Assembly (NCBI GenBank): GCA_950097015.1
Contig: CATNEN010000038.1
Span: forward strand, 558,001-622,000
Source of the DNA: Macrostomum hystrix
Lineage: Eukaryota; Animalia; Platyhelminthes
Direction: 5' to 3'
DNA length: 64,000 nucleotides
Within the stretch, counting starts at the first letter, position 1, and every line of letters begins with the position of its first letter. The position numbers and the translations under genes are program-made. Under the pieces are notes generated by a model that searched no databases, had not been told where the DNA came from, and saw only the letters and a list, made by a program, of their open reading frames with translations. Below are positions 29,589 through 44,644 of the stretch, piece after piece.

Positions 29589-29897
29589 TCAGTCGGAGCT
29601 GAAGTAGACCAGCTCATCAGCTGAGGACTTCTCAGTCTGCAGAGCGTGCAGACTGGGCTGCTCATTGGTGTGCGGCAGCGGCTTGAACACGCGGATGTGG
29701 ATGAAAGAATCCTCTCCGATGTGCACCTTGGCGAAATAGTTCGTGCCAGCCACCACCTGGCTGGCTATGAGGCGCGGCTCAAACTTCTCAAGAGAGCGGC
29801 CCAGACGGGCCTCAACCTGCGGCTTCACGCCGGTCAGCAGCTCGACCTCTTCGGGCGTTGGCTCGCGAGCATCTCCGGTGCCTCCAAGAAGTGGCAT
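29589..29897 (-). CDS. Type-1 cystatin (stefin, cystatin-B-like), copy 1, intronless, 102 aa
   Basis: MPLLGG...SQVVAGTNYFAKVHIG...HIRVFKPLPH...DELVYF; canonical QVVAG motif and N-terminal GG. Confidence 0.93.
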   Translation of the reverse strand: MPLLGGTGDAREPTPEEVELLTGVKPQVEARLGRSLEKFEPRLIASQVVAGTNYFAKVHIGEDSFIHIRVFKPLPHTNEQPSLHALQTEKSSADELVYFSSD

Positions 29898-30894
29898 ATT
29901 GCTAGCTGGTTTAGCTAGAAACGATTGAACCACAGTCCATATAAGAGGGACAGCCTTAAGCTGCGGCAATTGAGGCCCCCAACGGTCAACCCATGATGCA
30001 CAATGCACGCTACCGGACAATGAGAATGCCAGGGCAGATTTACATCCCGGAGTGTTTGCCTCTCATCGTACGCACATCCCCTAACCTGTACATTTACTAA
30101 ATTGCACATTCCCTAACATGTAACCAGTACATTCCTTAACTTGTACATATCTAAATCTGTACATTTACTAGCCAGCACCTTCCTAGATGGCGACAGCTAT
30201 AGGATGCATTGTTTATCAAATTAGGAGGACAATATTAGCCAAGTGGAAAGGTATTTATCAACTGAGGGGGTTGACAGTTTGAAATCATCAGATAAAGCAT
30301 TGCTAACTGAGCTTTTATATGGTCAGAGCTGTTATCAGGGATAAATTGCCCCCTTAAGTGAGGATATTTGCTCTCTGGGAGGCTATTTAACAGATTAATG
30401 ACGGGGCTACTCTAACTTAGGGAGCTGGATCGACAACTGACCGCACATGACAAGACGCAAAAAACAATTGAGGAATTCAAACGGTGACTAAATTCAAGGA
30501 CAATGAAAGCTAAGGCATCACTAATGAAGTTTTGGAATGTGAACTGGAAATAAACAAAACAGAAATCAAACACTAATGTGAATCTACGAGCTAGATCTGG
30601 ATAAGAACGGAAAATTCATATTGATTGATTGGTCAAAAGGTTTCTTAGTTCGATTATAATTAGTTGGTACTCGAAAAACTGTAAAACCTAATCAATGCCA
30701 ATGAAAAAAACGGAATACATTTTACAAATTGCGTTTTGAAAATTTCAATTTCATGATAGAATCAGTAAAAGACGAGCATCACTCCTCGAACGTAAAGCTA
30801 CAAAAGTGACTTTCGACTGTTGCTAAGCGCAAAGTGTATTTATTGTCTGAATAGCAAATATTTAGTCCGGAACCGCTCATCAAGCGAACTCAAC

Positions 30895-31203
30895 TCAGTC
30901 GGAGCTGAAGTAGACCAGCTCATCAGCTGAGGACTTCTCAGTCTGCAGAGCATGCAGACTGGGCTGCTCATTGGTGTGCGGCAGCGGCTTGAACACGCGG
31001 ATGTGGATGAAAGAATCCTCTCCGATGTGCACCTTGGCGAAATAGTTCGTGCCAGCCACCACCTGGCTGGCTATGAGGCGCGGCTCAAACTTCTCAAGAG
31101 AGCGGCCCAGACGGGCCTCAACCTGCGGCTTCACGCCGGTCAGCAGCTCGACCTCTTCGGGCGTCGGCTTGCGAGCATCTCCGGTGCCTCCGCACAGTGG
31201 CAT
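30895..31203 (-). CDS. Type-1 cystatin (stefin), copy 2, intronless, 102 aa
   Basis: MPLCGG...QVVAG; near-identical to copy 1. Confidence 0.93.
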   Translation of the reverse strand: MPLCGGTGDARKPTPEEVELLTGVKPQVEARLGRSLEKFEPRLIASQVVAGTNYFAKVHIGEDSFIHIRVFKPLPHTNEQPSLHALQTEKSSADELVYFSSD

Positions 31204-31349
31204 TTTGGGCTGGAAGAGCATTGTGATGAGCTTTGTACTATGGCTACACCCTAGTGAGATTTTCTGTTGTTAGCGAGAGGTTTGAAGTTCTAATCTCGGC
31301 ACAATCGAACAGCTTTGAGTCGTTTAGCAAACTTAGCTACGCGTTGCTT

Positions 31350-31622
31350 CAGTTCACACCCGCCTTAACTGGGCCAGATGTACAGCCGACAGAACAGCGG
31401 CAGCTATTGCGGGGCGCATCTGAAGGTTGCGTACGGCTGTTCAGTCCATGGACTGGGGGGACGCCACACCCACCCTCAATTATCCCAGCCAACACTGGAC
31501 CCATTTAACAGCCATTTAACAGTGTCTTGCTAAAGGACACAAATTGTCCCAATGGAGTCAGGAATCGAACCCCCCGACCTTCAAGTCGTGAGTCCGATGC
31601 TCTAACCACAAGGCTACAACCT
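31350..31622 (-). mobile_element. SINE family 1, near full length
   Basis: Reverse complement head ggttgtagccttgtggttagagcatcggactcacgacttgaaggtcggggggttcgattcctgactcca, then the shared core and palindrome (31442-31455). Confidence 0.85.
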
Positions 31623-32056
31623 CCTCTATTACTATTACTAGTTAGTACTTACTATTAAAACTATTACTACTAGTGCACAGACTTACTGTAGCATCAATAT
31701 AATTCTGGTGGAAGACAGAACTAACATAAGTGTAAAAACATTTAAGCAACATAAATGCTGAACTACTGAGAAGCACACTTTTTATTTCGACTTTTTTGAC
31801 ACGCAAAGCTACAGAAACTATTTTATTACATCGAAAGTTAATTCAGCGAAGTACAGAAATTGCACATGACATATCAACATTTCTCGAGTTCATATTAGGT
31901 TATAGCTACATCTATACTTCTGGATTTGAGAGATGAATCGAAAGAATGATGAAAACCTTACCGGTGAGTATAATGCAATACACTCTTGTGTCAAATTGTG
32001 ATCTAGCCGATATGTATTGAAAAATATACTTAAAAACTAAGCCTAAGAGAATTCGC

Positions 32057-33664
32057 TCAACCCTTTCCGCTGCGCTTCGATGCGGCATTCGACTTGGCCC
32101 CGGCGCCGGACCTGGCAGCCGCGGCAAAGTAGGCCGGCAGCTGCGGCTTCGGGAATGTGGCGTGGCAGGTGGTGCACAGCGGCGTGTAGCTGCAGTACAC
32201 TGACAGGCAGATTGAGCACACATAGGCTGTGGACACCAGGCGCCGATGACAGAAGCAGGCCGGGCGAGAATCGCTGGGACCAGACGAAGGCGGCAGAGTT
32301 AGAGAAGCCTGCCTTGCAGCTGGCTCAGCTAGGAACAGGCTGAGCAGGCACTGGAGCAGGGCGCTGGGTCTGGGTAGGCGCAGGTAGAAGCCGCCGGACA
32401 GCTCGGCAGCCTGGCGCAGCAGAGTGGAATCGGACTGCGCGAATCATTGGAGACAGGGATAAAAGCCACTTTCACTTTTTGCGTAGCAATGAATGCAATT
32501 TAGTAGTCTACTGCAAGTAGTGCCACTCGAAGCAAATAGGACGAGGCCGAAATAGAGAAGTATCACATAAAAAATCGATAGGATGTGAATAGGCTGTCCA
32601 ATTGACTTTGAGAAGCTGTTAGACGAAATGAGAAGCAGACAGGATGAGAAGTAGACAAAGTGAGAAGTAGAGAAAGTTAGAAGTAGACAGGATGAGAAGT
32701 AGAGAAATTTAGAAGTAGACAGGATGAGAAGCAGAAACAGGTTTAAGACAGAAGAAATGTGGAACATAGTAGTCTGGGCTAGTAAATAGATAGCAAGTAA
32801 CGTACAGCAGAAGAGTTAAAGAGGCCGCAATAGACTCACAGCAATAACACACGCATCGATGGGAATCTGACGCTTCTGAGCGGCAAACACAGCGTTCATC
32901 AGGGCCATGTACTGGGAGGCTTCGTCGCTACAGGCGCGCAGCAGCAGCACCCTGGAGGCCAGTCGAAGTCCCGGGGGAATCTCTCGCTCGCGTCTGGCAA
33001 TGTAGCACAGAGCCTTCACTAGGCAGCCGGCCATACAGACGGATAGGCGCAGCTTCTCTGGCCTGGCTGAGCGCATCAGAGCCTCGGCAGAGTCCTTCAC
33101 GCAATCGTTCATCATAGTGAAGCACTCCAGCTTGGCGCCGTCGGCAGGAGGTGGGCCTTGATGACTAACTTCAACGCTGGCAGCGGGATAGAGAAACTGT
33201 GTCTACGCATAGAGAGACAGGTTTCGAAACAATTTTCTTACAGCGAGGCATGCTGCTGCGAGTAAAACTAAACACACAGGAAGTGGCCTGAGGTCCCCAA
33301 CCTGAAGATCCGAGCAGCCTGAGGTCCCCAATCTGAAGATCCAAGAAGACTGAGGTCCCCATCCTGAAGATTTGAGTAGCCTGAGGTCCCCAACCTGAAG
33401 ATTGGAGAAGCCTGAGGTCCCCAACCTGAAGATCCGAGCAGAAGGGATTTCAGACTAACAAAATTAATTCAGCCTACACACCTGCTCTCCGCAGACGCCA
33501 AGAAAGGCGACCTCATTGCCTGGCTGCACAAGCAGGTGAGCATTGGCAAAGGTGAGCACAGATTGAAGCATGCGGCACACATCAGTGTCTGGCTGGATGC
33601 CCCACCAAGCTGGGTTCAAATCCAGCACAATGACTAGCAGCTGTTTGTCTGCAGTTGTTGACAT
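32057..33664 (-). CDS. GTF2H3: General transcription factor IIH subunit 3 (p34/Tfb4)
   Basis: Exons 33664-33482, 33202-32840, 32434-32057, all phase 0. Motifs LLVIVLDLNP..WG, FANAHL, FLYP, ALCYI, QYMALMNAVFAAQK..IPIDAC, LLRQAAELSGGFY, RPACFCH...YVCSICLSVYC....CTTC. Confidence 0.93.
33287..33440. repeat. 31-bp tandem repeat (~5 copies), intron 1 of GTF2H3
   Basis: Units of cctgaggtccccaacctgaagatccgagcag. Confidence 0.9.
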
Positions 33665-33671
33665 CCCAGAT

Positions 33672-35207
33672 TTAGACAAAGTCCAGCCAAGTCTGTAACA
33701 GCTCAGTCTCTAAATCAGCCAGCTGAACTCGAACGACTGATTTTGACTGCTGTTCTTCTTCGGGCTCAGTTTGTTCCACTTGCAGCGACTGGAGCTTCTT
33801 TCGCTGCTTGGATTCAGCGGCAGTGGCAGCTGAAGCTTTTCGAGCCTTGGCGGCGTTTGCCGCCCTGACGGCGCACTCCTCGGCGAATAGGCGAATCAAC
33901 TCGTTGCACTGCCTGGCTGCCTCAGGCTGGACTGATGGGGTGGGGATGCTGGCGCTTGTGAATGGGATCTGGACTCATTGCTAGAGTTAGTGAATTGGAT
34001 TTGGACTCAGTGCTGTGTTGGTGAATGGGATCAGGACTAATTGCTGTGTTGGTGAATGGGATTTGAACCCATTGCTAGAGTTGGTGAATTGGATTTGGAC
34101 TCAGTGCTGTGTTGGTGAATGGGATCAGGACTAATTGCTGTGTTGGTGAATGGGATTTGAACCCATTGCTAGAGTTGGTGAATGGGATTTGAACCCAATG
34201 CTAGAGTTGGTGAATGGGATCTGGACTAATTGCTGTGTTGGTGAATGGGATTTGAACCCATTGCTAGAGTTGGTGAATGTGATCTGGACTAATTGCTGTG
34301 TTGGTGAATGGGATTTGAACCCATTGCTAGAGTTCGTGAATGGGATCTGGACCCATTGCTAGAGTTGGTGAATGGGATCAGGACTAATTGCTGTGTTGGT
34401 GAATGGGATTTGAACCCATTGTTAGAGTTGGTGAATGGGATCTGGACTAATTGCTGTGTTGGTGAATGGGATTTGGACCCATTGCTAGAGTTGGTGAATG
34501 GGATATGGACTAATTGCTGTGTTGGTGAATGGGATTTGAACCCATTGCTAGAGTTGGTGAATGGGATTTGGACCCATTGCTAGAGTTGGTGAATGGGATT
34601 TGGACTAATTGCTGTGTTGGTGAATGGGATTTGAAACCATTGCTGGAGTTGGTGAATAGGATCATGACTCATTGCTACAATTGGTAAATAGGATCTAGAC
34701 TCATTACTAGATTCGGTGAATGGGATCAGGACTCATTGCTAGAGTTGGTAAATAGGATCTAGACTCATTACTAGATTTGGTGAATGGGATCTGGACTCAT
34801 TGCTAGAGTTGGTAAATAGGATCTAGACGCATTACTAGATTCGGTGAATGGGATCTGGACTCATTGCTAGAGTTGGTAAATAGGATCTAGACTCATTACT
34901 AGATTTTGTGAATGGGATTTGGACCCATTACTAGAGTTGGTGAATGGGATCTGGACTAATTGCTGTGTTGGTGAATGGGATTTGAACCCATTGTTAGAGT
35001 TGGTGAATGGGATCTGGACTCATTGCTAGAGTTGGTAAATAGGATCTAGACTCATTACTAGATTTGGTGAATGGGATCTGGACTCTAAAAAAGCATTACT
35101 AAATGTAAGGATAATAATAATTGGGAATTTATTCACAAAAATATATACCTACTTTTGACTTTGTTTTCTAAAAGAAAACCTTTAACTAGCTCAAGATTTG
35201 CCCAACT
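33672..35207 (-). CDS. CENPX: CENP-X/MHF2/STRA13-like histone-fold protein; no genomic ATG found
   Basis: Exon 35207-35149 (tttttctttccag|SWANLELVKGFLLENKVKS ag|gtatat) splices in phase 2 to an exon starting ~33954 (or 33948) and ending 33672: SVQPEAARQCNELIRLFAEECAVRA...VRVQLADLETELLQTWLDFV*. This matches the CENP-X pattern (EL..F..EA..R...V...LE....QL.LDF at the C-terminus). Confidence 0.78.
33957..35085. repeat. 31/32-bp minisatellite (TTGGTGAATGGGATTTGAACCCATTGCTAGAG variants) filling the CENP-X intron
   Basis: Visible alternating units. Confidence 0.95.
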
Positions 35208-38200
35208 CTGGAAAGAAAAAATGATTGAATATATTATAATAGCTATCAGTTGTGTTTTGCTAGTGATACAAGCACATTTTTAATTTATTTTTTTATATTT
35301 TTATTTTATTAAAATTAAAGGGTCTACAGATACTATTTCAGCATCAGTTCTACTAGTTATTTTAATTTTGTCATTTACATATAAGCATTCATAGATGCAA
35401 ATGAACATATAAATATATATATTTATTAAAGATATGTAGGCCTATAAAAGTTCTCTCAAAATAGGTCAGAGACATTTTTCATAATATACATTTTTGAACC
35501 ATTTAAACAAAGAGCAAAAATTACTTTCTTTTGTATAGTAGTAAAACTATTTGTCACTTCATTTATTGATTTTTTGTGAGGTCTAGAGTCAGACATATTG
35601 GACACTTTTAAAAACAGTATCACTAATAACTGCCATGTCATAGGACTGTAGGACAGGATCAACCTATGCCATCTTTATTACAAGGACGTCTAGAATACTA
35701 AAGTCAAGGACATAAATCTCAAAGACTATGTAAACTTTAGCCTAGCTAGCCAAAAAAGCCAGGGCCTAACCATAGACTATACATAGGCCTAGTCCATGCC
35801 AAAAATGCCAAAACCAATATAGGCTAGCCAATGGCATAAATATAGGCCCTAGGTCTAATCCTAAAGCAAAAATATTTTTTGTATAAAAACTTGGAGCAAA
35901 TTGTACCTCTAACAACTAGGCCTATGCCGCCTATCTAACAATCTTAGGCCTACACATAATTTTTTAAGAGGAACTAATAAACAACAACAGATAGGCCTAG
36001 GCCCTAGGCCTAGTATGTCAACAACCCATAAACACTGACAGTGAGTGAAGTTAGAAGTTTATCAGACAAACCAGACAAAATAGGCCTAGGGCCTATAGGT
36101 CTAGGATTTAGGTTCAAGAACCACAAATGGCTTGGCTTCTAGTCACTAGTGAACAAAAATAGCTAAGAAAAGCAGAATGCTATTTTTTAAACTCAGGGTT
36201 TGTTCACTGCCATAAATTATTGTCAAAACTTTGGCCTTTCTTTTTAAAATGTAGAGCTTATGATTGGATTTATAAAAATAAGAGCCATAAATTACGACAG
36301 GTTTGACCAGTGTCTCAAGAGATAGTAAAGTAACAAGTGTAGTGGTCTTCTTAAATCAGGAAATACTATTTCCGAAATAGCTCGTAATACCACTTGCTTA
36401 CTCCTTCGATAACGCACCATAGGCATCATCATCAGTGATTGGGCAAATGAGCTGCATAAACAACAGTTTAAACTCCTGACAATACGATGAATAAATCACA
36501 AAACACCGATTTATGCAGTTCAGCTTTTACAGAACAGTTAAATGTAGGCCTAACATAAATTCGATTTTATACACCAGTGTTTTGTTTGTCTGCTGAGTTT
36601 TTAAATTATTCAGAAACTTGCCGGTGTTTCAGAACTTGTAACTTATGCCCATCTGTTCTATTATTCGAGAACTTTGGATATGACGATCTGATAATTGGCT
36701 TAGATACTTGTTTTTATGTAATAACCTATCTGGAAACCTTTTCCTGTCACTATAAAAAACATTTAAAACAGATATTTTCGAAGATCAGTTAAAAATACCG
36801 ATTTAAGTCCATCAATCTTAGACTTCGCGTAGGCAACGGCAAGATCGACACCAAACAAGCAAAAATTCAATGATTTTTTTCACTGTAGGCCTATCTCTTT
36901 TAGTCAATTTTAGCTAGAACTATTCTTGAGCGATATCAAAATGAATCGACTCTGAAGTTTTTGAAAAAATATAGAAAAAAGGAGTAGGCCTATTGACTCA
37001 AATTGGTTTTGAAAAAAGTTAGCTATTGACCATTTTAGGTCAAAACCAAACAAGAAATGAGCTATTATCCTGCTTCATCAAGCCAATTACAACAACAAAG
37101 CCGTCTGGCTAGCTAATCTTATGAATCTGCTATTAGCTATGGTTAGTTTTTTATGACCTGAGACCATAGTCAGAGAATAAACAGAACAGCAAATATATAG
37201 TGTAATATAGGCCTATATCAAGGTTTTTGCTAGATTTTATTAAGACTGAGTGCTCAAATTGCTATGTCAATGTAGGTGCTTCTACATTTTTAATAGACCC
37301 TAGGCTAGGCCTATTGGAACAAAGTTTGCCTATATAGGCCCCCTACCTAAAATTGAGAAAGATTGAGAATGATGTGTGCTTTAGCCTTGCTAAGCCAGCT
37401 AGGGCCTAGTGCCACCCAACAACTTTGTAGGTAAATAAATATTCTCTTTTATAATTATATTCAGTTCACTATTTAAAAGCTAAGTTCAAGCAGCAGTAGT
37501 AGGCCTAGTAAAACTAAAGTGCTAGTGCTCTTTATGGAAGTCCTAAAGTCTGCTAGATGCTAGGGGCCTATCCATAGATTCTCAACATTTTCATTGAGTA
37601 GCCCTGTAATTCAGTGACCCAAAATATCATGGGTTATGGGACAATTTTTTATGATTGTTTTTATTCTGTCTGATGATTTTGATAAATTTAGTTTAAAAAT
37701 GCAGAAATTGATTGCATAGGCCTAGTATTATAAAATTTACTATAAGTTTTTTTATCAAATGATAGACAAGTTTTTACTTATTGCAAAGTTAGAATTTAAG
37801 ACTAAAAGAGAAAGTAAAAAAATAGATTTTGTGAAAAAAATGGCATAGTATTTGTGATTTATTTTTACTCACTGAGAAGTTTTTAGATTCAAGAATGTAG
37901 ATATATATTTGCTATGCTGCACCACATGCGACTAACCTTAACTTGGTCAAATTAAAAAATATACTTGGCTTAGTCACGGATAAGCAATAAGTGCTTATAA
38001 TAGTGAAAGAGCTATAGAAACTAGTTGTAACAAGCCAAGCAAGTCACTTGCTAGTCAATGTGCTTTGATGTCAGTTTGGGTTAGTCATCATTACCAAAGC
38101 TCCTATTGATAGTGCCCATTCTCAAATATGCTTGTGACTCACTGTCAATCATAGAAAAACTGTTGAGTATGAAAGTTGCTCCAATACTAGCAAGTAACAA

Positions 38201-39532
38201 GCCTTTCAAATGATGCCATTGCATTGAAATTATATTTATGCTCAATTGGCAATTGGCAAGGATTGCAATAGCACTCAATATACTAAGGTGTTTGGTGGGT
38301 TACACATGATCATACGTTTGCATGATGATTGAAGATTGTAGTTGGATTGGAAATAATTGCTATGATTCACCTCACCCTTCTGGTTCTAGAACTTTTTCTA
38401 ATAGGCTTGGTATATTATATTTAGTATTAACAAAAACAAAAGTCTTTACAAGCCAAAATCTTTATTATATTTAAATGTTGGAAGCTAATTAGCAATGAAT
38501 AAAAAAAATTGCAATTGTGCACATGTGTCAAGTTAAAACTTTTTTGCTTTGAAAATTTACTAAAATCTTGAGTTTGATTACTAACTAATTTTAACTATAG
38601 AAAATTTTCTATTTTTAACTTTCTTACTTGTAACTATCAGAATGTAAGAATCCAGATACAGTTAATGCATACTGCATAAGTTTAAATATGCAGTGATGTT
38701 GTGTAAATCTAGACTAAAAATACCCTAATGCTAAGAAATGGCTAAGAGAGGGGGCCTTTTGTGAAACCTTTAATTAGGACCACTAATTGACAAAAATTCA
38801 AGTAAGATGTACAATCTAGTGTGTGCCCTAATGGAGCAATTTAAAAAAGCTGCGGACACTCCTGCTAGGCGCGCAGGTGCGCAGTTGTTTTCAAGAAAAA
38901 GAGAGCAAATCCGCAATTGCTATATATCTTCAGTCTGACTCAATGTAGTAATTGATTTCATGAAAAAATGTCGAAAGACCTTTTTTGATCTCCGTAGTGT
39001 ATTTCTATAATTAAAACAGCTAAGGTTGTCTTTTTGCACTCGGGCACTGCAGAGCATGTATTCGTGTAGGGGCACAAGGGTGCACTGTTTGTTATACATC
39101 TACATACATATTACAACTTTACACACACGAGGTGCAGCCGCGTGGACAGGAATTTCTTTCTGCGTAGCGGCGCAGGCAATTTTTCACAAGCGCGCCGGAC
39201 GCTGTCCATAAAAACCCCTATTGGCTCCAATAGGGAGTGTGTGTGCCCACATAATGTAAATAGTGTGCTTTTACAGGGCTATTATAATTGGCAGACTGGC
39301 AGCAGGTCCACTGTCACCAATGAATATATAGTCTGTAGTCAAAAGTCCTGCAAAAACGAGTTTTATCCTAGGCTGTCTAGTTGTACAATTGTACATTTGT
39401 CTTGCACTAGCCTATTATTACATAGTCTAGTAAAAAGCATTGTATAATTTTTAGCTTCGATTGCTAAAATGTGACATTTATATTTTCAAATACATGCAAG
39501 TAAAATAATTAGTCAATGCTCTGTATTTGCAG

Positions 39533-42500
39533 CAACAGCAGCCGCAGATGTCAGAGGAGAGCAGCAGCAATGAGGCTGCCACTGTGGCGCCGGCGATCTG
39601 CAAGTGCGGCTGCGGCTTCTACGCCTCCCCCCAGTTTGACGGCATGTGCAGCGTCTGCTACAAGGCTGCAGCAGCCGGTGACACCGCCTCAGTCAGCGTG
39701 GCGACTGCTGCTTCTGGTGCCGCGGCTGAGACAGTTCCGTTATTGGGTGCGAATTTTAATTCTATTGTCTAGCTCTCTGATTAACCTACCCCCCCGAGAG
39801 GATTGTAACCAAGTAGTTAGAGTTCCCAGAGGGCTTAAATACTGGGTGTAAATATTTGTACTTATAAAAACTGTCTCATTGTAGGCAACAGTTCACCTGT
39901 CCCAGTACCTGAGGCTGACATAGCCCAGGCATCAATCGATGAAGGAGAATCTTCTATGCCGCCACCGCCGTTGCCGCCACCTCAGCAGCAGATAGCCCTG
40001 CCCCCAGAGTCCATCGCTGCTATGCTGGCCCTGCCACCCGATGACGGAGCCGCCTCACAAGGAGCTTCGTCTGGTAGGTAGCAATAAGCAGTTGGATGAT
40101 GACTGACCATGAGCAGAAATAATCATTGCGGGAGGGCTGCGGGCAATGGCACATCATTTGGTGACACTAGACCCGCAGCGAGCGAGGAGGCAATTCTGCT
40201 CATTTCGCTGACTCCTGAGCACACACGCTCACAGATACCGTACGCAGGCATACGCTCACAAAGGTATCTACATCTGGCCTGATTCTCATCGTCAGGCAGT
40301 GTACACTTTCACTGTGCCTTGGAGGTTGGCCCTCAAGGGCGTAAATTGCACGACAAGTCCTCAAGCCTTCTCTCCGCAGCTGCGCACAAATAAATTAGGA
40401 ATCGAGCTCAGGGACCTTGGGGCGAGAGGCAAATGCGTTAAACGCTCGGCCACCGACCCCCGACTATGAGCAGTAGACACACCGTCAGATTGCGGGGATG
40501 TGGAATGACTATGACAAATAAACACATCGTTGTTCGAATGTGTTTATAAAGAGCGCAATATTGTGGAAAGTATATTTTTTAAGTGACTGAAACCGATTTT
40601 CACAGTACAATTGTAGTTAAATAAAGATTTCTATTTAATTTTGCGAATATTAACAGAGTTTATTAATTCACTGCATGCCTTCAGACGCCAGCAGCAGCGG
40701 CGGAGGCAGCGTTGGCGGCGGTAGCTGCGAGTTGAAGCGCCGAAATCGATGCCACGCCTGCAAGAAGCGAGTCGGACTCACCGGTCAGTGTCTATTACTC
40801 TGTATATCTATTTTCCTAGATCTACTCAGAACCTGAATACCTGAGCATTTTTGTTGATCTACTCAGAACCTGAATACCTGAGCATTTTTTTTATCTACTC
40901 AGAACCTGAATACCTGAGCATTTTCGTAGATCTACTCAGATCCTGAATACCTGAGCATTTTGTTGATCTACTCAGAACCTGAATACCTGAGCATTTTTTT
41001 TATCTACTCAGAACCTGAATACCTGAGCATTTTCGTAGATCTACTCAGATCCTGAATACCTGAGCATTTTTGTAGATCTACTCAGAACCTGAATACCTGA
41101 GCATTTTTATAGATCTACTCAAAAACCTAAATGCCTGAGTATGTTTGTAGATCTACTCAGAACCTGAATACCTGAGCATTTTCGTAGATCTACTCAGAAC
41201 CTGAATACCTGAGCATTTTTGTAGATCTACTATATATATATATATATATAGACGCAAAAAGTTAGATAGCTTTTGCGCGCACGCGCTCGCAGAACAGTCG
41301 GGAGGGGCAGGCCATGGCGGACTGGGGATCAAGTCCGATAGCCTGCAAGTCAGCCAACAGAGTGGTAATTAGCGTCACAGTTCTTCCTTGGCCGCGGCGC
41401 AGCCGCTCGGTCGGTTGGTGCAGGAGGACCAGCGCAAGCGGGTTTCGCTCGCCGCGACCGTGGCTCCTCAGACAGTGGCCCAGCAGCATCTGGCGGCGCC
41501 GGCGCAGGGTGACGCTCAGGGCTGGGACGCCGGCGCGAACCATCAGGTCTCTGGACGGCAGCCTCTCCGGGTAGTGCACGCCCAGGGCGTGGCGCAGCAG
41601 GGACCTGTATAGCGCGTCCAGGGCTTTCTCTCGCGTGGCGGTCATCGGCACTGCTTCCATGCCGTACAGAGGGATAGGCTCAACGGCAGCGCGGAAGAGG
41701 CGCACCTTCAGGCTGTCTCTTGCAGCAGAGTTGAAGACGTTCCTGAGAAGGTGCGCCGCACGCCAGGCCTGATTCCTTCTGTCGGAGACGATGGAGTCGG
41801 GACTCATCACCAGGGAGCCGAGGTACCGAAAGTCCTCGCACACCGCGATGGCGTCTCCGTTGGGCAGATCTAGTGCCGGGGCGGTATCAGTGCCCACGTG
41901 CAGCACTTCTGTCTTCAGTGCGTTGATCATCAGTCCAAACCGAGCGCCCTCCTCGCAGAGACTTAAGAGAGCGCGTTGGGCAGCAGCTGGATCGCGACAG
42001 AGGAGTGCGATGTCGTCGGCATACGCAAGAGCCGGCAGCGGGACTGCAGGGTGTCGGGAGCTTCGACGTGGGACTAGCACATAGCCGTCGTCATCATGGA
42101 GAGACCGGCGCAGCACGTAGTCCACGACCATGATGAAAAGCAGAGGAGCCAGCGTGTCGCCCTGAAGGACGCCAGAGCTTGTGCTGAACTCATCAGTGGG
42201 GCCGTCGCTCGACTGAACAAATGCCCTGGAATCGCTGTACAGATCCATCACCGCAGCCACCAGTGCAGGGGGGACGCCGTAGTAGGACAGCAGCAATGCA
42301 ATCGCTGGCCTGGCCACCGAGTCAAAAGCCTTCCGGAAATCCACGAAGACAATCGACACGGAGCGCAGGCGGGTCTTGCAGGCCTCAATGATTGAGCGGA
42401 TGGTTGCAACCTGCTCAGTGGTGGACCTGCCTGGCCGAAAACCGCTCTGGAGACTCAGCAGCAGTGGGTTGAGACCTGGCAGGAGGCGGTTGCGCAGCAC

Positions 42501-44644
42501 AGCATTCAGCAACTTTGCCGTGGTACATTCCAGCGCAATGCCACGCTGGTTGTCCAGGCTTGTAGAAGCCCCCTTCTTCGGGATGAAAACGATCTTGGAG
42601 GTGCGCCATTGTGGGGGCGCGCAGGCGGCCGCGTCGCCTCCAAGACTGCAGTGCTTGTTCAGCACCTCGGTGATGGCGGGGGTCAGCTCTGGTAGCTTCA
42701 GGACCCTGGGAGGAATCGTATCCACCCCAGCAGCGGCGTCGGCACGCATGGTCCTCAGAGCCCGGCCAACCTCGCTCGTTGTGATAGGGCCAACGTTGAA
42801 GACGCTAGGTTCTGCTGGGACAAAGTCTGGGATTGGTAAAAGAAGTAAATTTTGTGCAGGAGCATTAAGCACATCGCGGTAGTGGTTGACCAGCTGAGTC
42901 TTGCGATGCTCGATGGAGTCCGCGCCAACAACTGCGCTAGGCCTGGGCTTCCTGCCAGTCAGCTGGTTGATGGCCCGCCAAGCAGCGCTGTGGCGGCAGT
43001 TGTCGGTCGCTAGCTGGATCTCGCTCACTGCCTCTTCAACAAACACCTCGGTTCGCTGGGCATAGATGACTTGCAGCTGGTCCCGGGCAGTGTTGGCCTG
43101 GTTGCTATCATCGCCATGGAGGGCGGTGACGCTCTGCACGTGTCGTCGCGCTTGACTGATTGCAGGATCGTTGTCCCACAGCGCCTTGGGATGGTTTGCC
43201 CTCCGTCTTGGGAGAATGGATGCTGCATCCTCGACAGCCCTGGTGAAGGAGTCGGCCGACTCATTCAAAGCGGGAGTTGCAGCACGCAGCCTGTCCAGAA
43301 AGGCTGCCCGCGTAGCTGGATTCCTCAGGTCAGCCCATAGCGGGTGAGGAGGGGGGCACTTCAGCTTGGACCAGCGCAAGTCAGTGTCGCAGGCCACCAG
43401 ACTATGATCGGACCTCACGCAGCTAGGACGAATGTTGAGCACTCTGCGCACTCTGGACCTGAGGGCAGAGGGGCAGAGTATCCAGTCTAGCCGGGTGGTC
43501 CGTCCATTGGGGCCAAAGAAGGTCGGGATCTTGCAATAGCGCTGCCGCAGAAAGCCATTAACAGGCGTCAGGTCCCTTGCCTGGATGAAGCAGGACAGGT
43601 GATCAGAGTTGGCATTTGGAGTGCCACAGTTGTTCTTCACCAGGCGGCCATCAGCGGGGAGGGGCGCATTGAAATCGCCAACGACAAAAACTGAATCGTG
43701 GGCAGGGAGAGAATCAAGCAGATGACCCAGAGTGTCATACAGGGCATCTGTGTCTGCCGGATTCTCGCTGGTCCGAGGGGCTGTGGGGGCGTAGACACAG
43801 ACGACATGCAGGCGCCGATCCTTCAGGGCAAAGGATGCGTGTCCGAGGCGCTCAGAGATGAATCTGACATCCAGCAGGGCTTTGGATGCGGCGGGCGAGA
43901 GCAGAAAGCCAATGCCTCCGATCCCACGTGGCGTGGCTGGGGCAGCCTTGAATTGCCACCCGAGGCCCAGGTCCGCGCTTTCATCTCTGCTCCTGCGGTG
44001 CTCTTGGATGGCCAGAATAGAGATCTCCAGATCCACCGCTAGCCGAGTCAACTCCTGCAGCCTCCACCAGAGACTGAGGGTGCGGGCGTTGAACGTGGCG
44101 AGTCGAATCTGGTTCGGAAGGTGCGGCCATCTACTCAGATCCTGAATACCTGAGCATTTTAGTAGATCTACTCAGAACCTGAATACCTGAGCATTTTAGT
44201 AGATCTACTCAGATCCTGAATACCTGAGCATTTTAGTAGATCTACTCAGAACCTGAATACCTGAGCATTTTTGTAGATCTACTCAGAACCTGAATACCTG
44301 AGCATTTTTATAGATCTACTCAAAAACCTAAATGCCTGAGTATGTTTGTAGATCTACTCAGAAACGGAATACAGGAGTTTTTTGTGGATTTACTAAAATC
44401 CTGAATACATGAGCATTTTATTTTTTAACTACTCATACTGATGCATCCTATATTACTGATAAGTAGCACACAATACACCGGCTTTCATTCCGCAGGCTTC
44501 GAGTGCCGCTGCGGTGGCACGTACTGTCCGGCCCATCGCTACAGCGATAAGCACGATTGCTCGTTTGACTATCGGACCCACGGCCGACACGAGATTCGCA
44601 AGGCCAATCCGCAGGTTCTGTCTAGGAAAGTTGAGCGCCTATGA
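39533..44644 (+). CDS. A20- and AN1-type zinc finger protein (ZFAND5/6-like)
   Basis: Exons 39533 (ATG at 39548)-39746, 39885-40073, 40685-40783, 44496-44644. A20 finger [22 protein letters not shown]; AN1 finger [12 protein letters not shown]|[26 protein letters not shown]; terminal ANPQV..KVERL. Confidence 0.93.
40126..40465 (-). mobile_element. SINE family 2 copy in ZFAND intron 2
   Basis: Reverse complement matches 13548-13900 and 61454-61825. Confidence 0.85.
40815..41231. repeat. 37-bp minisatellite (AGATCTACTCAGAACCTGAATACCTGAGCATTTTTGT)n, left part
   Basis: Periodic; continues at 44129-44420 after the LINE. Confidence 0.95.
41232..44128 (-). mobile_element. Non-LTR retrotransposon (APE endonuclease + RT, RTE-like), 5'-truncated, (TA)n tail, TSD ATCTACT
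   Basis: TSD at 41225-41231 and 44129-44135; (TA)n at 41231-41250; very short 3' UTR; single ORF. Confidence 0.92.
41262..44128 (-). CDS. LINE ORF: apurinic-like endonuclease plus reverse transcriptase
   Basis: Motifs [35 protein letters not shown]; [47 protein letters not shown]. No stops over >929 aa. Confidence 0.93.
44129..44420. repeat. 37-bp minisatellite, right part
   Basis: Same unit as 40815-41231. Confidence 0.95.

What the first reader, a model, noticed from the sequence alone, without database searches (positions are those of the whole stretch)
32057..35207. Candidate dicistronic CENP-X to TFIIH-p34 unit: stop and start only 7 nt apart
Seen on the - strand: GAC TTT GTC TAA atctggg ATG TCA ACA. 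The CENP-X-like ORF stops at 33674-33672 and the Tfb4 ATG is at 33664-33662, in a different frame. The 7-nt gap holds no AG acceptor and cannot fit a poly(A) signal or promoter. Known: trans-spliced operons are normally resolved at an intercistronic acceptor preceded by a 3'-end signal; CENP-X/MHF2 (FANCM-MHF, kinetochore) and p34 (TFIIH/NER) are both genome-maintenance subunits. Inference: either one mature mRNA carries both cistrons (termination-reinitiation or leaky scanning), or Tfb4 is released by splicing to ttacag inside the last CENP-X codons (~33693), which would make the two products mutually exclusive.
Basis: partly seen in the sequence, partly recalled or inferred. Interest (0 to 1): 0.85.

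Follow-up and report, generated by a model that had tools for sequence, protein, structure and literature searches.

The report
Two flatworm genes on one mRNA
In the flatworm Macrostomum hystrix the genes for the histone-fold protein CENP-X and the TFIIH subunit p34 lie 7 bases apart and appear on one spliced RNA with no processing site between them, a rare layout for an animal, although how the second protein gets translated is still untested.

Summary
On the minus strand a CENP-X reading frame ends at TAA 33674-33672. Seven bases later (ATCTGGG, no AG) comes the ATG (33664-33662) of a complete three-exon Tfb4/p34 gene in another frame.

The genome is the published M. hystrix assembly. It carries the 35-nt Macrostomum spliced leader, which ends in ATG. 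CENP-X has no ATG of its own. Its 55-nt first exon opens in phase at a TTCCAG acceptor, so the leader most likely supplies the start.

RNA-derived contigs from one study are spliced at both p34 introns. They run unbroken from the p34 3' end through the ATG, the gap and all of CENP-X exon 2. No leader junction appears at the proposed TTACAG acceptor. No poly(A) signal lies between the CENP-X stop and the p34 3' end.

The 322 nt ahead of the p34 ATG contain no ATG (P about 0.05).

Two M. lignano gene models place the same CENP-X exon directly against p34. Their linker peptide can encode LDFV-stop plus a 4-nt gap, so the abutment looks conserved.

Most likely this is an unresolved bicistronic mRNA read by leaky scanning. 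The contigs also retain the tail of CENP-X intron 1, so the transcript's 5' end and the translation mechanism remain open.

The parts
35153..35207 (-). CENP-X exon 1: 55 nt, 18 codons plus 1 nt (SWANLELVKGFLLENKVK), with no ATG. It begins in phase directly after the acceptor tttctttccag|AGT (AG at 35209-35208) and ends at the donor A|GTAGGT.
   Evidence: It is 78% identical to residues 1-18 of the M. lignano partial CENP-X P0001, which also starts at SW without a Met. The acceptor fits the published trans-splice motif [T/C]TNCAG (PMC8629364).
33932..35152 (-). CENP-X intron 1 (1221 nt, GT..AG). Most of it is a 32-nt tandem array at 33958-35085, about 36 copies.
   Evidence: RNA contigs of X5 and X6 include at least its last 29 nt (33932-33960) and 27 further unseen letters. 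The 31-mer at 33988-33958 occurs 4 times in the genome, all inside this intron.
33672..33931 (-). CENP-X exon 2. TC completes the split Ile codon, then come 85 codons (QPEAARQCNELIRLF...LLQTWLDFV) and TAA at 33674-33672.
   Evidence: Pfam PF09415 scores 23.3 bits, profile 18-74/74. The exon start is 100% identical to P0001 residues 20-38. It is covered by RNA contigs with no differences.
33693..33698 (-). The exon would start at 33692, 28 nt before the Tfb4 ATG.
   Evidence: Motif scan. There is no joint, loose end or contig break here in runs X1, X2, X5 or X6.
33665..33671 (-). 7-nt inter-ORF spacer ATCTGGG.
   Evidence: It holds no AG, no ATG and no 3'-end signal.
33482..33664 (-). Tfb4/p34 exon 1 (61 codons, MSTTADKQLLVIVLDLNPAWWG...).
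   Evidence: PF03850 scores 38.6 bits, profile 2-53. RNA joint 33482^33202.
32840..33202 (-). Tfb4/p34 exon 2 (121 codons).
   Evidence: PF03850 scores 78.2 bits, profile 58-181. RNA joints on both sides.
32057..32434 (-). Tfb4/p34 exon 3 coding part: 125 codons including the Cys-rich zinc-binding end, with stop TGA at 32059-32057.
   Evidence: PF03850 scores 93.1 bits, profile 186-273. RNA joint 32840^32434.
31774..32056 (-). Shared 3' UTR with AATAAA at 31827-31822 and 31786-31781. The RNA contigs end at 31800 (X5) and 31774 (X6).

Best explanation
CENP-X and TFIIH p34 (Tfb4) of Macrostomum hystrix form one transcription unit with a single 3' end. No RNA-processing site separates the two reading frames.

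The CENP-X-coding mRNA is made by trans-splicing the 35-nt spliced leader onto the TTCCAG acceptor at 35208. The leader's terminal AUG becomes the CENP-X start codon. This mRNA necessarily carries the whole p34 ORF behind it, so it is a true bicistronic mRNA.

p34 is translated from the first genomic AUG (33664). That AUG is reached by scanning 40S subunits which skip the leader AUG, because the leader AUG sits in a poor context: U at -3 and A at +4. They then cross 322 nt that contain no AUG in any frame. This is leaky scanning. The same AUG-free leader would serve any 5' variant that lacks the CENP-X start.

Shown: gene identities, splice sites, the 7-nt gap, a contiguous spliced RNA, the absence of internal 3'-end signals, and the presence of the leader in the genome.

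Inferred: that the leader is joined at 35208, that both proteins come from one molecule, and that scanning rather than reinitiation reaches the second AUG.
For: - RNA contigs of X5 and X6 (1504 and 1530 nt) are spliced at both p34 introns. They are colinear from 31800/31774 to at least 33960, with no differences, joints or loose ends at the junction. All four runs X5-X8 hold every sampled word of 33482-33950.
- No AATAAA-like hexamer lies in any exon between the CENP-X stop and 32018. The canonical signals are at 31827 and 31786, where the contigs end.
- Exon 1 has no ATG and starts in phase at an acceptor. The M. lignano orthologue is annotated as a partial protein starting at the same SW residues.
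- The M. lignano leader ending in TTGCATG (PMC8629364) occurs exactly at 23 or more places in this genome. Leader AUGs as start codons are documented for flatworms (PMC12582326).
- There are zero ATGs in exon 1 plus exon 2 plus the gap (322 nt). Dinucleotide shuffles give a mean of 2.2 and P(0) = 0.05.
- p34 is single-copy and CENP-X has no other detectable copy. The partner CENP-S is present at 85 bits. Both ORFs are therefore expected to be expressed.
- The abutment recurs in two M. lignano models. Their linker WILFN is the only peptide that can encode LDFV-TAA in the +2 frame, with a 4-nt gap to the ATG.
- Weak first-ORF start contexts, AUG-poor first ORFs and short inter-ORF spacers are the hallmarks of bicistronic loci in green algae shown experimentally to use leaky scanning (PMC11892635).
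Against: - A contig across two genes does not prove a single molecule.
- The bridging evidence comes from one study.
- The X5 and X6 contigs do not switch to exon 1 at the exon-2 acceptor. They run on into intron 1, so in those libraries the exon1-exon2 join is rarer than intron-containing RNA. The mature leader-exon1-exon2-p34 form was not seen directly.
- Given a Met-free protein, the lack of out-of-frame ATGs is not significant (synonymous permutation P = 0.47).
- The start context that favours initiation in Macrostomum has not been measured.
- In runs X1 and X2 coverage fades upstream of the p34 ATG, although coverage there is patchy everywhere.
Confidence: 0.45

Rival explanations
1. p34 is made mainly from a monocistronic mRNA created by trans-splicing the leader to an acceptor inside CENP-X exon 2 (TTACAG, exon start 33692). 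This destroys the CENP-X message, so each primary transcript yields either CENP-X or p34. It would resemble the C. elegans SL1-type operons that have no intercistronic space (the C. elegans comparison is from my own knowledge).
For: TTACAG fits the published acceptor motif [T/C]TNCAG (PMC8629364). It lies 28 nt before the ATG, a usual distance: the cystatin gene downstream has TTCCAG 6 nt before its ATG. TTA is used for Leu at this spot. In runs X1 and X2 the contigs thin out upstream of the p34 start.
Against: There is no joint, loose end or contig break at 33692 in any of the four runs, and the X5 and X6 contigs pass straight through. The leader AUG would open an in-frame 7-codon mini-ORF (MTWLDFV-stop) ending 7 nt before the p34 AUG, so skipping or reinitiation would still be needed. 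CENP-X would still lack a 3' end of its own.
Confidence: 0.2
2. The main p34 mRNA has its own 5' end inside CENP-X intron 1, either from a start site in or near the 32-nt array or from a leader joined to an acceptor in a repeat unit. CENP-X exon 2 then serves only as an AUG-free 5' leader. CENP-X comes from a minor isoform that begins at exon 1.
For: The X5 and X6 contigs continue past the exon-2 acceptor to 33960 plus 27 letters. All four runs of that study hold the words across the intron-exon border. The contig start coincides with the first 31-mer that is unique beside the array.
Against: The same picture arises from plain retention of a slowly spliced repeat-rich intron. Array units carry ATGs, the nearest at 33978 opening an 18-codon uORF. 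These would burden translation if the 5' end lay further upstream. No start or leader junction was observed.
Confidence: 0.15
3. Ribosomes translate CENP-X, terminate at TAA and reinitiate 7 nt downstream at the p34 AUG (termination-reinitiation).
For: The stop and start are 7 nt apart. The spacer plus start reads UCUGGGAUG, which contains UGGGA, the core of the calicivirus reinitiation motif (the motif is from my own knowledge; the sequence is).
Against: The first ORF has about 105 codons, and reinitiation efficiency falls steeply with ORF length (discussed in PMC11892635). No significant RNA structure surrounds the junction (z = 0.23). A 5-nt motif overlapping the AUG is easily chance.
Confidence: 0.05
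4. The CENP-X frame is an untranslated relic and the region is just the 5' UTR of p34.
For: Exon 2 alone scores just under the Pfam cut-off. The exon1-exon2 join was not seen in the contigs.
Against: Both exons are conserved at the protein level with M. lignano at 78% and 100% over the comparable parts, and the orthologue passes the Pfam cut-off. The frame is open to the family's natural C-terminus. No other CENP-X copy was found, while CENP-S is present. The one variant seen in RNA (33702) is synonymous in the CENP-X frame.
Confidence: 0.05

Closest known systems
Bicistronic nuclear loci of green algae translated by leaky scanning (e.g. TOM22, OST4, REX1S_REX1B; PMC11892635)
   Same: Two unrelated ORFs in different frames sit on one capped, polyadenylated mRNA. 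The inter-ORF spacer is very short (14 nt in REX1; 7 nt here). The first ORF has a weak start context, and there are few or no AUGs ahead of ORF 2.
   Different: This is an animal that also has leader trans-splicing. The first start codon is not encoded at the locus but donated by the leader. Nothing has been tested experimentally, and AUG depletion is only marginally significant.
Spliced-leader operons of flatworms (M. lignano: PMC8629364; parasitic flatworms: PMC12582326)
   Same: The organism group, the leader and the acceptor motif at the first gene are the same. The genes share a strand and are co-transcribed.
   Different: In M. lignano, repeat-adjusted distances between trans-spliced genes peak at about 100 bp, and the downstream gene has its own acceptor. 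Here the spacer is 7 nt without AG, no 3'-end signal serves the upstream gene, and the RNA contigs are not cut between the ORFs.
Flatworm spliced-leader AUG used as initiator methionine (Cheng et al. 2006, as cited in PMC12582326; slORFfinder, PMC9851317)
   Same: CENP-X lacks a genomic ATG and begins in phase at a trans-splice-type acceptor. Many such genes have been noted in this genome by the scan.
   Different: Here the leader-started ORF is followed on the same RNA by a second complete ORF.
Drosophila dicistronic genes such as stoned, where the second cistron depends on an AUG-free first cistron (from my own knowledge, not checked in the library)
   Same: It is an animal dicistronic mRNA with an AUG-poor first cistron.
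   Different: Drosophila has no leader trans-splicing, and its spacers and ORFs are longer.
C. elegans SL1-type operons without intercistronic space (from my own knowledge)
   Same: There is no room between the genes. If the internal acceptor were used, the two products would be mutually exclusive.
   Different: In C. elegans the UTRs abut, not the coding regions. Here the acceptor would lie inside the upstream coding sequence, and no use of it was seen.

Membership tests
Tfb4 / TFIIH p34 (Pfam PF03850) | Profile match above the gathering score over the full domain | tested here: met
   The three exons score 38.6, 78.2 and 93.1 bits (cut-off 27) and cover profile 2-273/273. The genome-wide search finds only this locus. 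The closest relative, P0002, is named General transcription factor IIH subunit 3 by UniRef.
Tfb4 / TFIIH p34 (Pfam PF03850) | Natural N-terminus at the proposed ATG | tested here: met
   The profile starts at residue 8 of exon 1. The Tfb4 frame is closed 15 codons upstream and holds no other ATG. The M. lignano models have a Met at the same place.
CENP-X / MHF2 (Pfam PF09415) | Profile match above the gathering score | tested here: inconclusive
   Exon 2 alone scores 23.3 bits against a cut-off of 25, covering profile 18-74/74. The 20-aa exon 1 gives no hit on its own. The M. lignano orthologue P0001 (exon 1 plus the start of exon 2) passes at 29.4 bits, profile 7-50. The joined two-exon protein was not searched, by instruction.
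CENP-X / MHF2 (Pfam PF09415) | Partner CENP-S/MHF1 encoded in the same genome | tested here: met
   PF15630 scores 85.2 bits at G000:C37:1523586-1523804.
CENP-X / MHF2 (Pfam PF09415) | Histone-fold structure and binding to CENP-S | not tested
   No structure or complex prediction was run. A PDB sequence search with exon 2 gave no hit.
Resolved spliced-leader operon | Trans-splice acceptor between the upstream stop and the downstream start | tested here: not met
   The spacer ATCTGGG has no AG.
Resolved spliced-leader operon | 3'-end formation signal for the upstream gene | tested here: not met
   No AATAAA-like hexamer lies in CENP-X exon 2 or in p34 exons 1-2. The first exonic hexamer is at 32018, and the canonical ones are at 31827 and 31786.
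Resolved spliced-leader operon | Leader junction on the downstream gene in RNA | tested here: inconclusive
   No loose end or joint was seen at 33692 or elsewhere in four runs of contigs. Contigs drop rare variants and cannot show 5' ends.
Bicistronic mRNA read by leaky scanning | Both ORFs on one mature polyadenylated molecule | tested here: inconclusive
   Spliced contigs bridge both ORFs in X5 and X6. A contig is not a single molecule, and its 5' part carries the intron-1 tail instead of exon 1.
Bicistronic mRNA read by leaky scanning | Weak start context at ORF 1 and no AUG between the two starts | tested here: met
   The leader ends TTGCATG (U at -3) and is followed by A. There are zero ATGs in 322 nt, with shuffle P = 0.05.
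Bicistronic mRNA read by leaky scanning | ORF 2 output falls when the ORF 1 start is strengthened or an AUG is inserted upstream | not testable with these tools
   This needs a reporter assay. Transgenesis exists for M. lignano (PMC8629364).

The most novel reading that the evidence does not exclude
Macrostomum keeps a conserved, deliberately unresolved bicistronic mRNA even though it has the leader trans-splicing machinery that normally separates co-transcribed genes. The leader donates a weak AUG for CENP-X. The AUG-free CENP-X frame lets most ribosomes pass to the essential TFIIH subunit p34. One message therefore sets a fixed low-to-high ratio of two genome-maintenance proteins. In M. lignano the same junction may have gone a step further, to an in-frame CENP-X-p34 fusion.
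Probability: 0.3. Interest if true: 0.7.

Novelty: new variant of a known kind. Interest (0 to 1): 0.55.

Why it matters
Flatworm polycistronic units are generally described as resolved into monocistronic mRNAs by leader trans-splicing. A gene pair whose coding regions are 7 nt apart, with no acceptor, no 3'-end signal and a contiguous spliced RNA, would show that true bicistronic mRNAs coexist with trans-splicing in an animal. It would also tie two known flatworm features into one translational design: the leader-donated AUG and its poor start context.

The case matters practically too. Gene predictors fuse or truncate such pairs. The two M. lignano UniProt models read CENP-X into p34, and the NCBI model of CENP-X is a 59-aa fragment.

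The pair is testable, because transgenesis exists in the sister species M. lignano.

Tried and rejected
- **Closed or capped tools.** The 27 letters at the 5' end of the X5 and X6 contigs, and the exon 1 region, could not be examined.
- **Joined protein models.** Every exon was searched separately by reference.
- **A second CENP-X gene.** The only other genome hit (C39:3092580, 21.7 bits) is a tandem repeat, not a gene.
- **RNA structure at the junction.** Folding gave z = 0.23, so there is nothing IRES-like or TURBS-like.
- **Programmed frameshift or read-through fusing the frames.** No slippery heptamer sits at the junction, and the RNA shows no indel.
- **CENP-X-p34 fusions outside Macrostomum.** Ten Tfb4 homologues with N-terminal extensions carry no CENP-X domain, and two of them gave no alignment to exon 2.
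- **AUG depletion as strong evidence.** It is only marginal: P = 0.05 by dinucleotide shuffles and 0.47 once the Met-free protein is taken as given.
- **PDB sequence search with exon 2.** No hit.
- **Literature.** A search for bicistronic mRNAs in flatworms found no report. This covers the held library only.
Full report
**What is there**

On the minus strand the sequence reads GAC TTT GTC TAA atctggg ATG TCA ACA. The TAA is at 33674-33672 and the ATG at 33664-33662. The seven bases between them (33671-33665) contain no AG. The two frames differ.

**Organism**

The window is G000:C38:558001-622000 of an assembly of 220,453,370 bases in 42 contigs. These figures are exactly those of the Macrostomum hystrix assembly of Wiberg et al. 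2023 (PMC10468722). The 35-nt M. lignano spliced leader, CGG...TTGCATG (PMC8629364), is present without mismatch at 23 or more places, including tandem arrays.

**The downstream gene**

Three exons (33664-33482, 33202-32840, 32434-32060, stop 32059-32057) each pass the Pfam gathering score for Tfb4. Together they cover profile positions 2-273 of 273. Both introns are confirmed by RNA joints. It is the only Tfb4 locus in the genome.

The ATG is the natural N-terminus. The profile starts at residue 8, and the frame is closed 15 codons upstream without another ATG.

**The upstream gene**

The open stretch ending at the TAA matches Pfam CENP-X over profile 18-74 of 74 at 23.3 bits, just under the cut-off of 25. 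A database search returned a partial M. lignano protein, PAA55129.1 / BOX15_Mlig014280g1 (P0001). It starts SWSNLDLVKSFLQENKVKIQPEAARQ.

- Its residues 1-18 match a 55-nt exon at 35207-35153 (78% identity).
- Its residues 20-38 match the stretch from 33929 (100% identity).
- Residue 19 is a codon split by a GT..AG intron at 35152-33932.
- P0001 passes the CENP-X cut-off at 29.4 bits.

Exon 1 has no ATG, and the frame upstream of it is closed without one. It starts in phase right after tttctttccag, which fits the trans-splice motif [T/C]TNCAG. The leader's terminal ATG would give a 105-aa CENP-X. Leader-donated start codons are known in flatworms (PMC12582326; PMC9851317). Other readers of this scan noted many ATG-less genes in this genome.

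No second CENP-X copy was found; the one other hit is a tandem repeat. The partner CENP-S is present at 85 bits.

**Surroundings**

Upstream of exon 1 lie about 4 kb of AT-rich DNA without minus-strand coding. Beyond that is a plus-strand A20/AN1 zinc-finger gene interrupted by a non-LTR retroelement. CENP-X is therefore the first gene of its unit.

Downstream, about 600 nt past the p34 poly(A) signals, come two cystatin genes on the same strand. The nearer one has a TTCCAG acceptor 6 nt before its ATG.

**RNA evidence**

Eight public runs hold the junction region. Four runs of one 2020 study hold every sampled word of 33482-33950. I laid four runs on 31600-33960.

- Runs X5 and X6 each give one contig (1504 and 1530 nt). 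It is spliced at 32434^32840 and 33202^33482, so it derives from RNA.
- These contigs are colinear with the genome from 31800/31774 to 33960, with no difference, no joint and no loose end anywhere near the TAA-gap-ATG or the TTACAG at 33693.
- The contigs end close behind AATAAA at 31827 and 31786.
- No AATAAA-like hexamer lies in CENP-X exon 2 or in p34 exons 1-2. CENP-X therefore has no 3' end of its own, and any polyadenylated CENP-X message must carry the whole p34 ORF.
- Runs X1 and X2, from another study, give only short, patchy contigs.

**A complication**

The X5 and X6 contigs do not change to exon 1 at the exon-2 acceptor (33932/33931). They run on to 33960, the end of the stretch I laid, and have 27 more letters. 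Position 33987 is exactly the first 31-mer that is unique next to the 32-nt array. The preceding 31-mer occurs four times in the genome, all within this intron.

The simplest reading is that intron-1 RNA is present in these libraries and outweighs the exon1-exon2 join. This could be a slowly spliced, repeat-filled intron, or a p34 transcript with a 5' end in the intron. The alternative readings, leader or exon 1 joined to acceptors in the repeat units, would give the same break.

The mature leader-exon1-exon2-p34 molecule is therefore inferred, not seen.

**Features bearing on translation**

- Exon 1, exon 2 and the gap (322 nt) contain no ATG in any frame. Dinucleotide shuffles give a mean of 2.2 and P(0) = 0.05. 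Given the Met-free protein, the out-of-frame absence alone is not significant (P = 0.47).
- The leader AUG has U at -3 and would be followed by A, a poor context by the usual animal rule (my own knowledge). The p34 AUG has G at -3.
- The junction is not structured (z = 0.23).
- These are the traits of the green-algal bicistronic loci for which leaky scanning was shown in vivo (PMC11892635).
- Reinitiation after a 105-codon ORF is expected to be inefficient (same paper).
- If the leader were joined at 33692, its AUG would open the mini-ORF MTWLDFV-stop, ending 7 nt before the p34 AUG. Skipping would be needed in that case too.

**Conservation**

An exhaustive protein search with p34 exon 3 returned one close relative, P0002 (89% identity, 393 aa). 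P0002 and its cluster mate P0171 are UniProt models A0A1I8GS65 and A0A1I8JGG5 of M. lignano. Both begin at the start of CENP-X exon 2 ((Q)PEAARQCNELIRLF). Both read in frame into p34...VRLSDLDS GWILFNL MSSSTPDRHLLVLVLDLNP.

The linker corresponds to the p34-frame reading of the window's junction (GWTLSKSGM). W-I-L-F-N is the only pentapeptide pattern whose codons can spell L-D-F-V-TAA in the +2 frame. It occurs nowhere else among about 49,000 windows of the fetched proteins.

M. lignano DNA therefore very probably holds the CENP-X end LDFV-stop just 4 nt before the p34 ATG. The abutment then predates the split of the two species.

Compared with M. hystrix, the models lack 16 nt (the ELLQT codons plus one base), which puts the two ORFs in one frame. 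Without M. lignano DNA I cannot decide whether this is a real deletion (a natural fusion protein), an error of the older assembly, or a modelling artefact. Extended Tfb4 homologues from other organisms show no CENP-X part.

**Verdict**

The finding is real and both genes are correctly named. The evidence favours an unresolved bicistronic unit with one 3' end, over a classical operon resolved between the cistrons.

- Leaky scanning past the leader-donated AUG is the best-fitting mechanism, at about 0.45.
- The internal-acceptor route (0.2) and a p34 5' end in the intron (0.15) remain open.
- Reinitiation and a dead CENP-X are unlikely.

Bicistronic mRNAs, leader-donated AUGs and flatworm operons are each known. 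Their combination, a leader-started first cistron that is not cut from the second, was not found in the literature I could search. I class it as a new variant of a known kind, of moderate interest, and readily testable with long reads.

Noticed in passing
P0002 and P0171 (UniProt A0A1I8GS65, A0A1I8JGG5; M. lignano): Both gene models read CENP-X exon 2 in frame into TFIIH p34 (..DLDS|GWILFNL|MSSS..). Relative to M. hystrix they lack 16 nt. The linker is a frame-shifted reading of LDFV-stop. This could be a natural fusion, an assembly error or a model artefact. The NCBI model of the same CENP-X (PAA55129.1) is a 59-aa fragment partial at both ends.
   Followed up: partly
window 33958-35085: There is a 32-nt tandem array of about 36 copies inside CENP-X intron 1. 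One of its 31-mers occurs only in this intron genome-wide. The array appears to be represented in RNA, because the contig breaks exactly at the first unique word.
   Followed up: partly
window 33286-33438 and 32620-32735: Both p34 introns also hold short tandem arrays: a 31-nt unit with about 5 copies, and a 16/32-nt unit with about 7 copies.
   Followed up: no
window 33176: Run X1 shows an alternative acceptor for p34 intron 1, joint 33482^33176, which lies 26 nt inside exon 2. It would shift the frame and is probably a non-productive isoform. It rests on one low-depth contig.
   Followed up: no
window 33702: There is a C>T difference on the plus strand in a run X1 contig. It is GAG>GAA, synonymous in the CENP-X frame.
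   Followed up: no
window 30898-31269 and 29592-30062 (minus strand): Two tandem cystatin-domain genes (Pfam 34.9 and 34.2 bits) lie on the same strand downstream of p34. The nearer one has a TTCCAG acceptor 6 nt before its ATG, so they may be further members of the same transcription unit.
   Followed up: partly
window 39509-44641: A plus-strand A20/AN1 zinc-finger gene lies here (zf-A20 at 39.5 kb, zf-AN1 at 44.4 kb). Between its parts, on the minus strand (41265-44171), sits a 969-aa open frame with endonuclease and reverse-transcriptase domains, a non-LTR retroelement.
   Followed up: partly
G000:C15, C17, C42 and C39:12.667-12.686 Mb: Exact spliced-leader copies sit in tandem arrays with a period of about 11.6 kb. 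A separate array with a period of about 927 bp carries a 3-mismatch leader variant (..CTCTCTTTTTTGCATG).
   Followed up: no
window 31550-31640 (minus strand): A tRNA-like stretch (..GGTTAGAGCATCGGACTC..GGTTCGATTCC..) lies between p34 and the cystatin gene. ARAGORN calls no tRNA there, so it may be a tRNA-derived repeat.
   Followed up: partly
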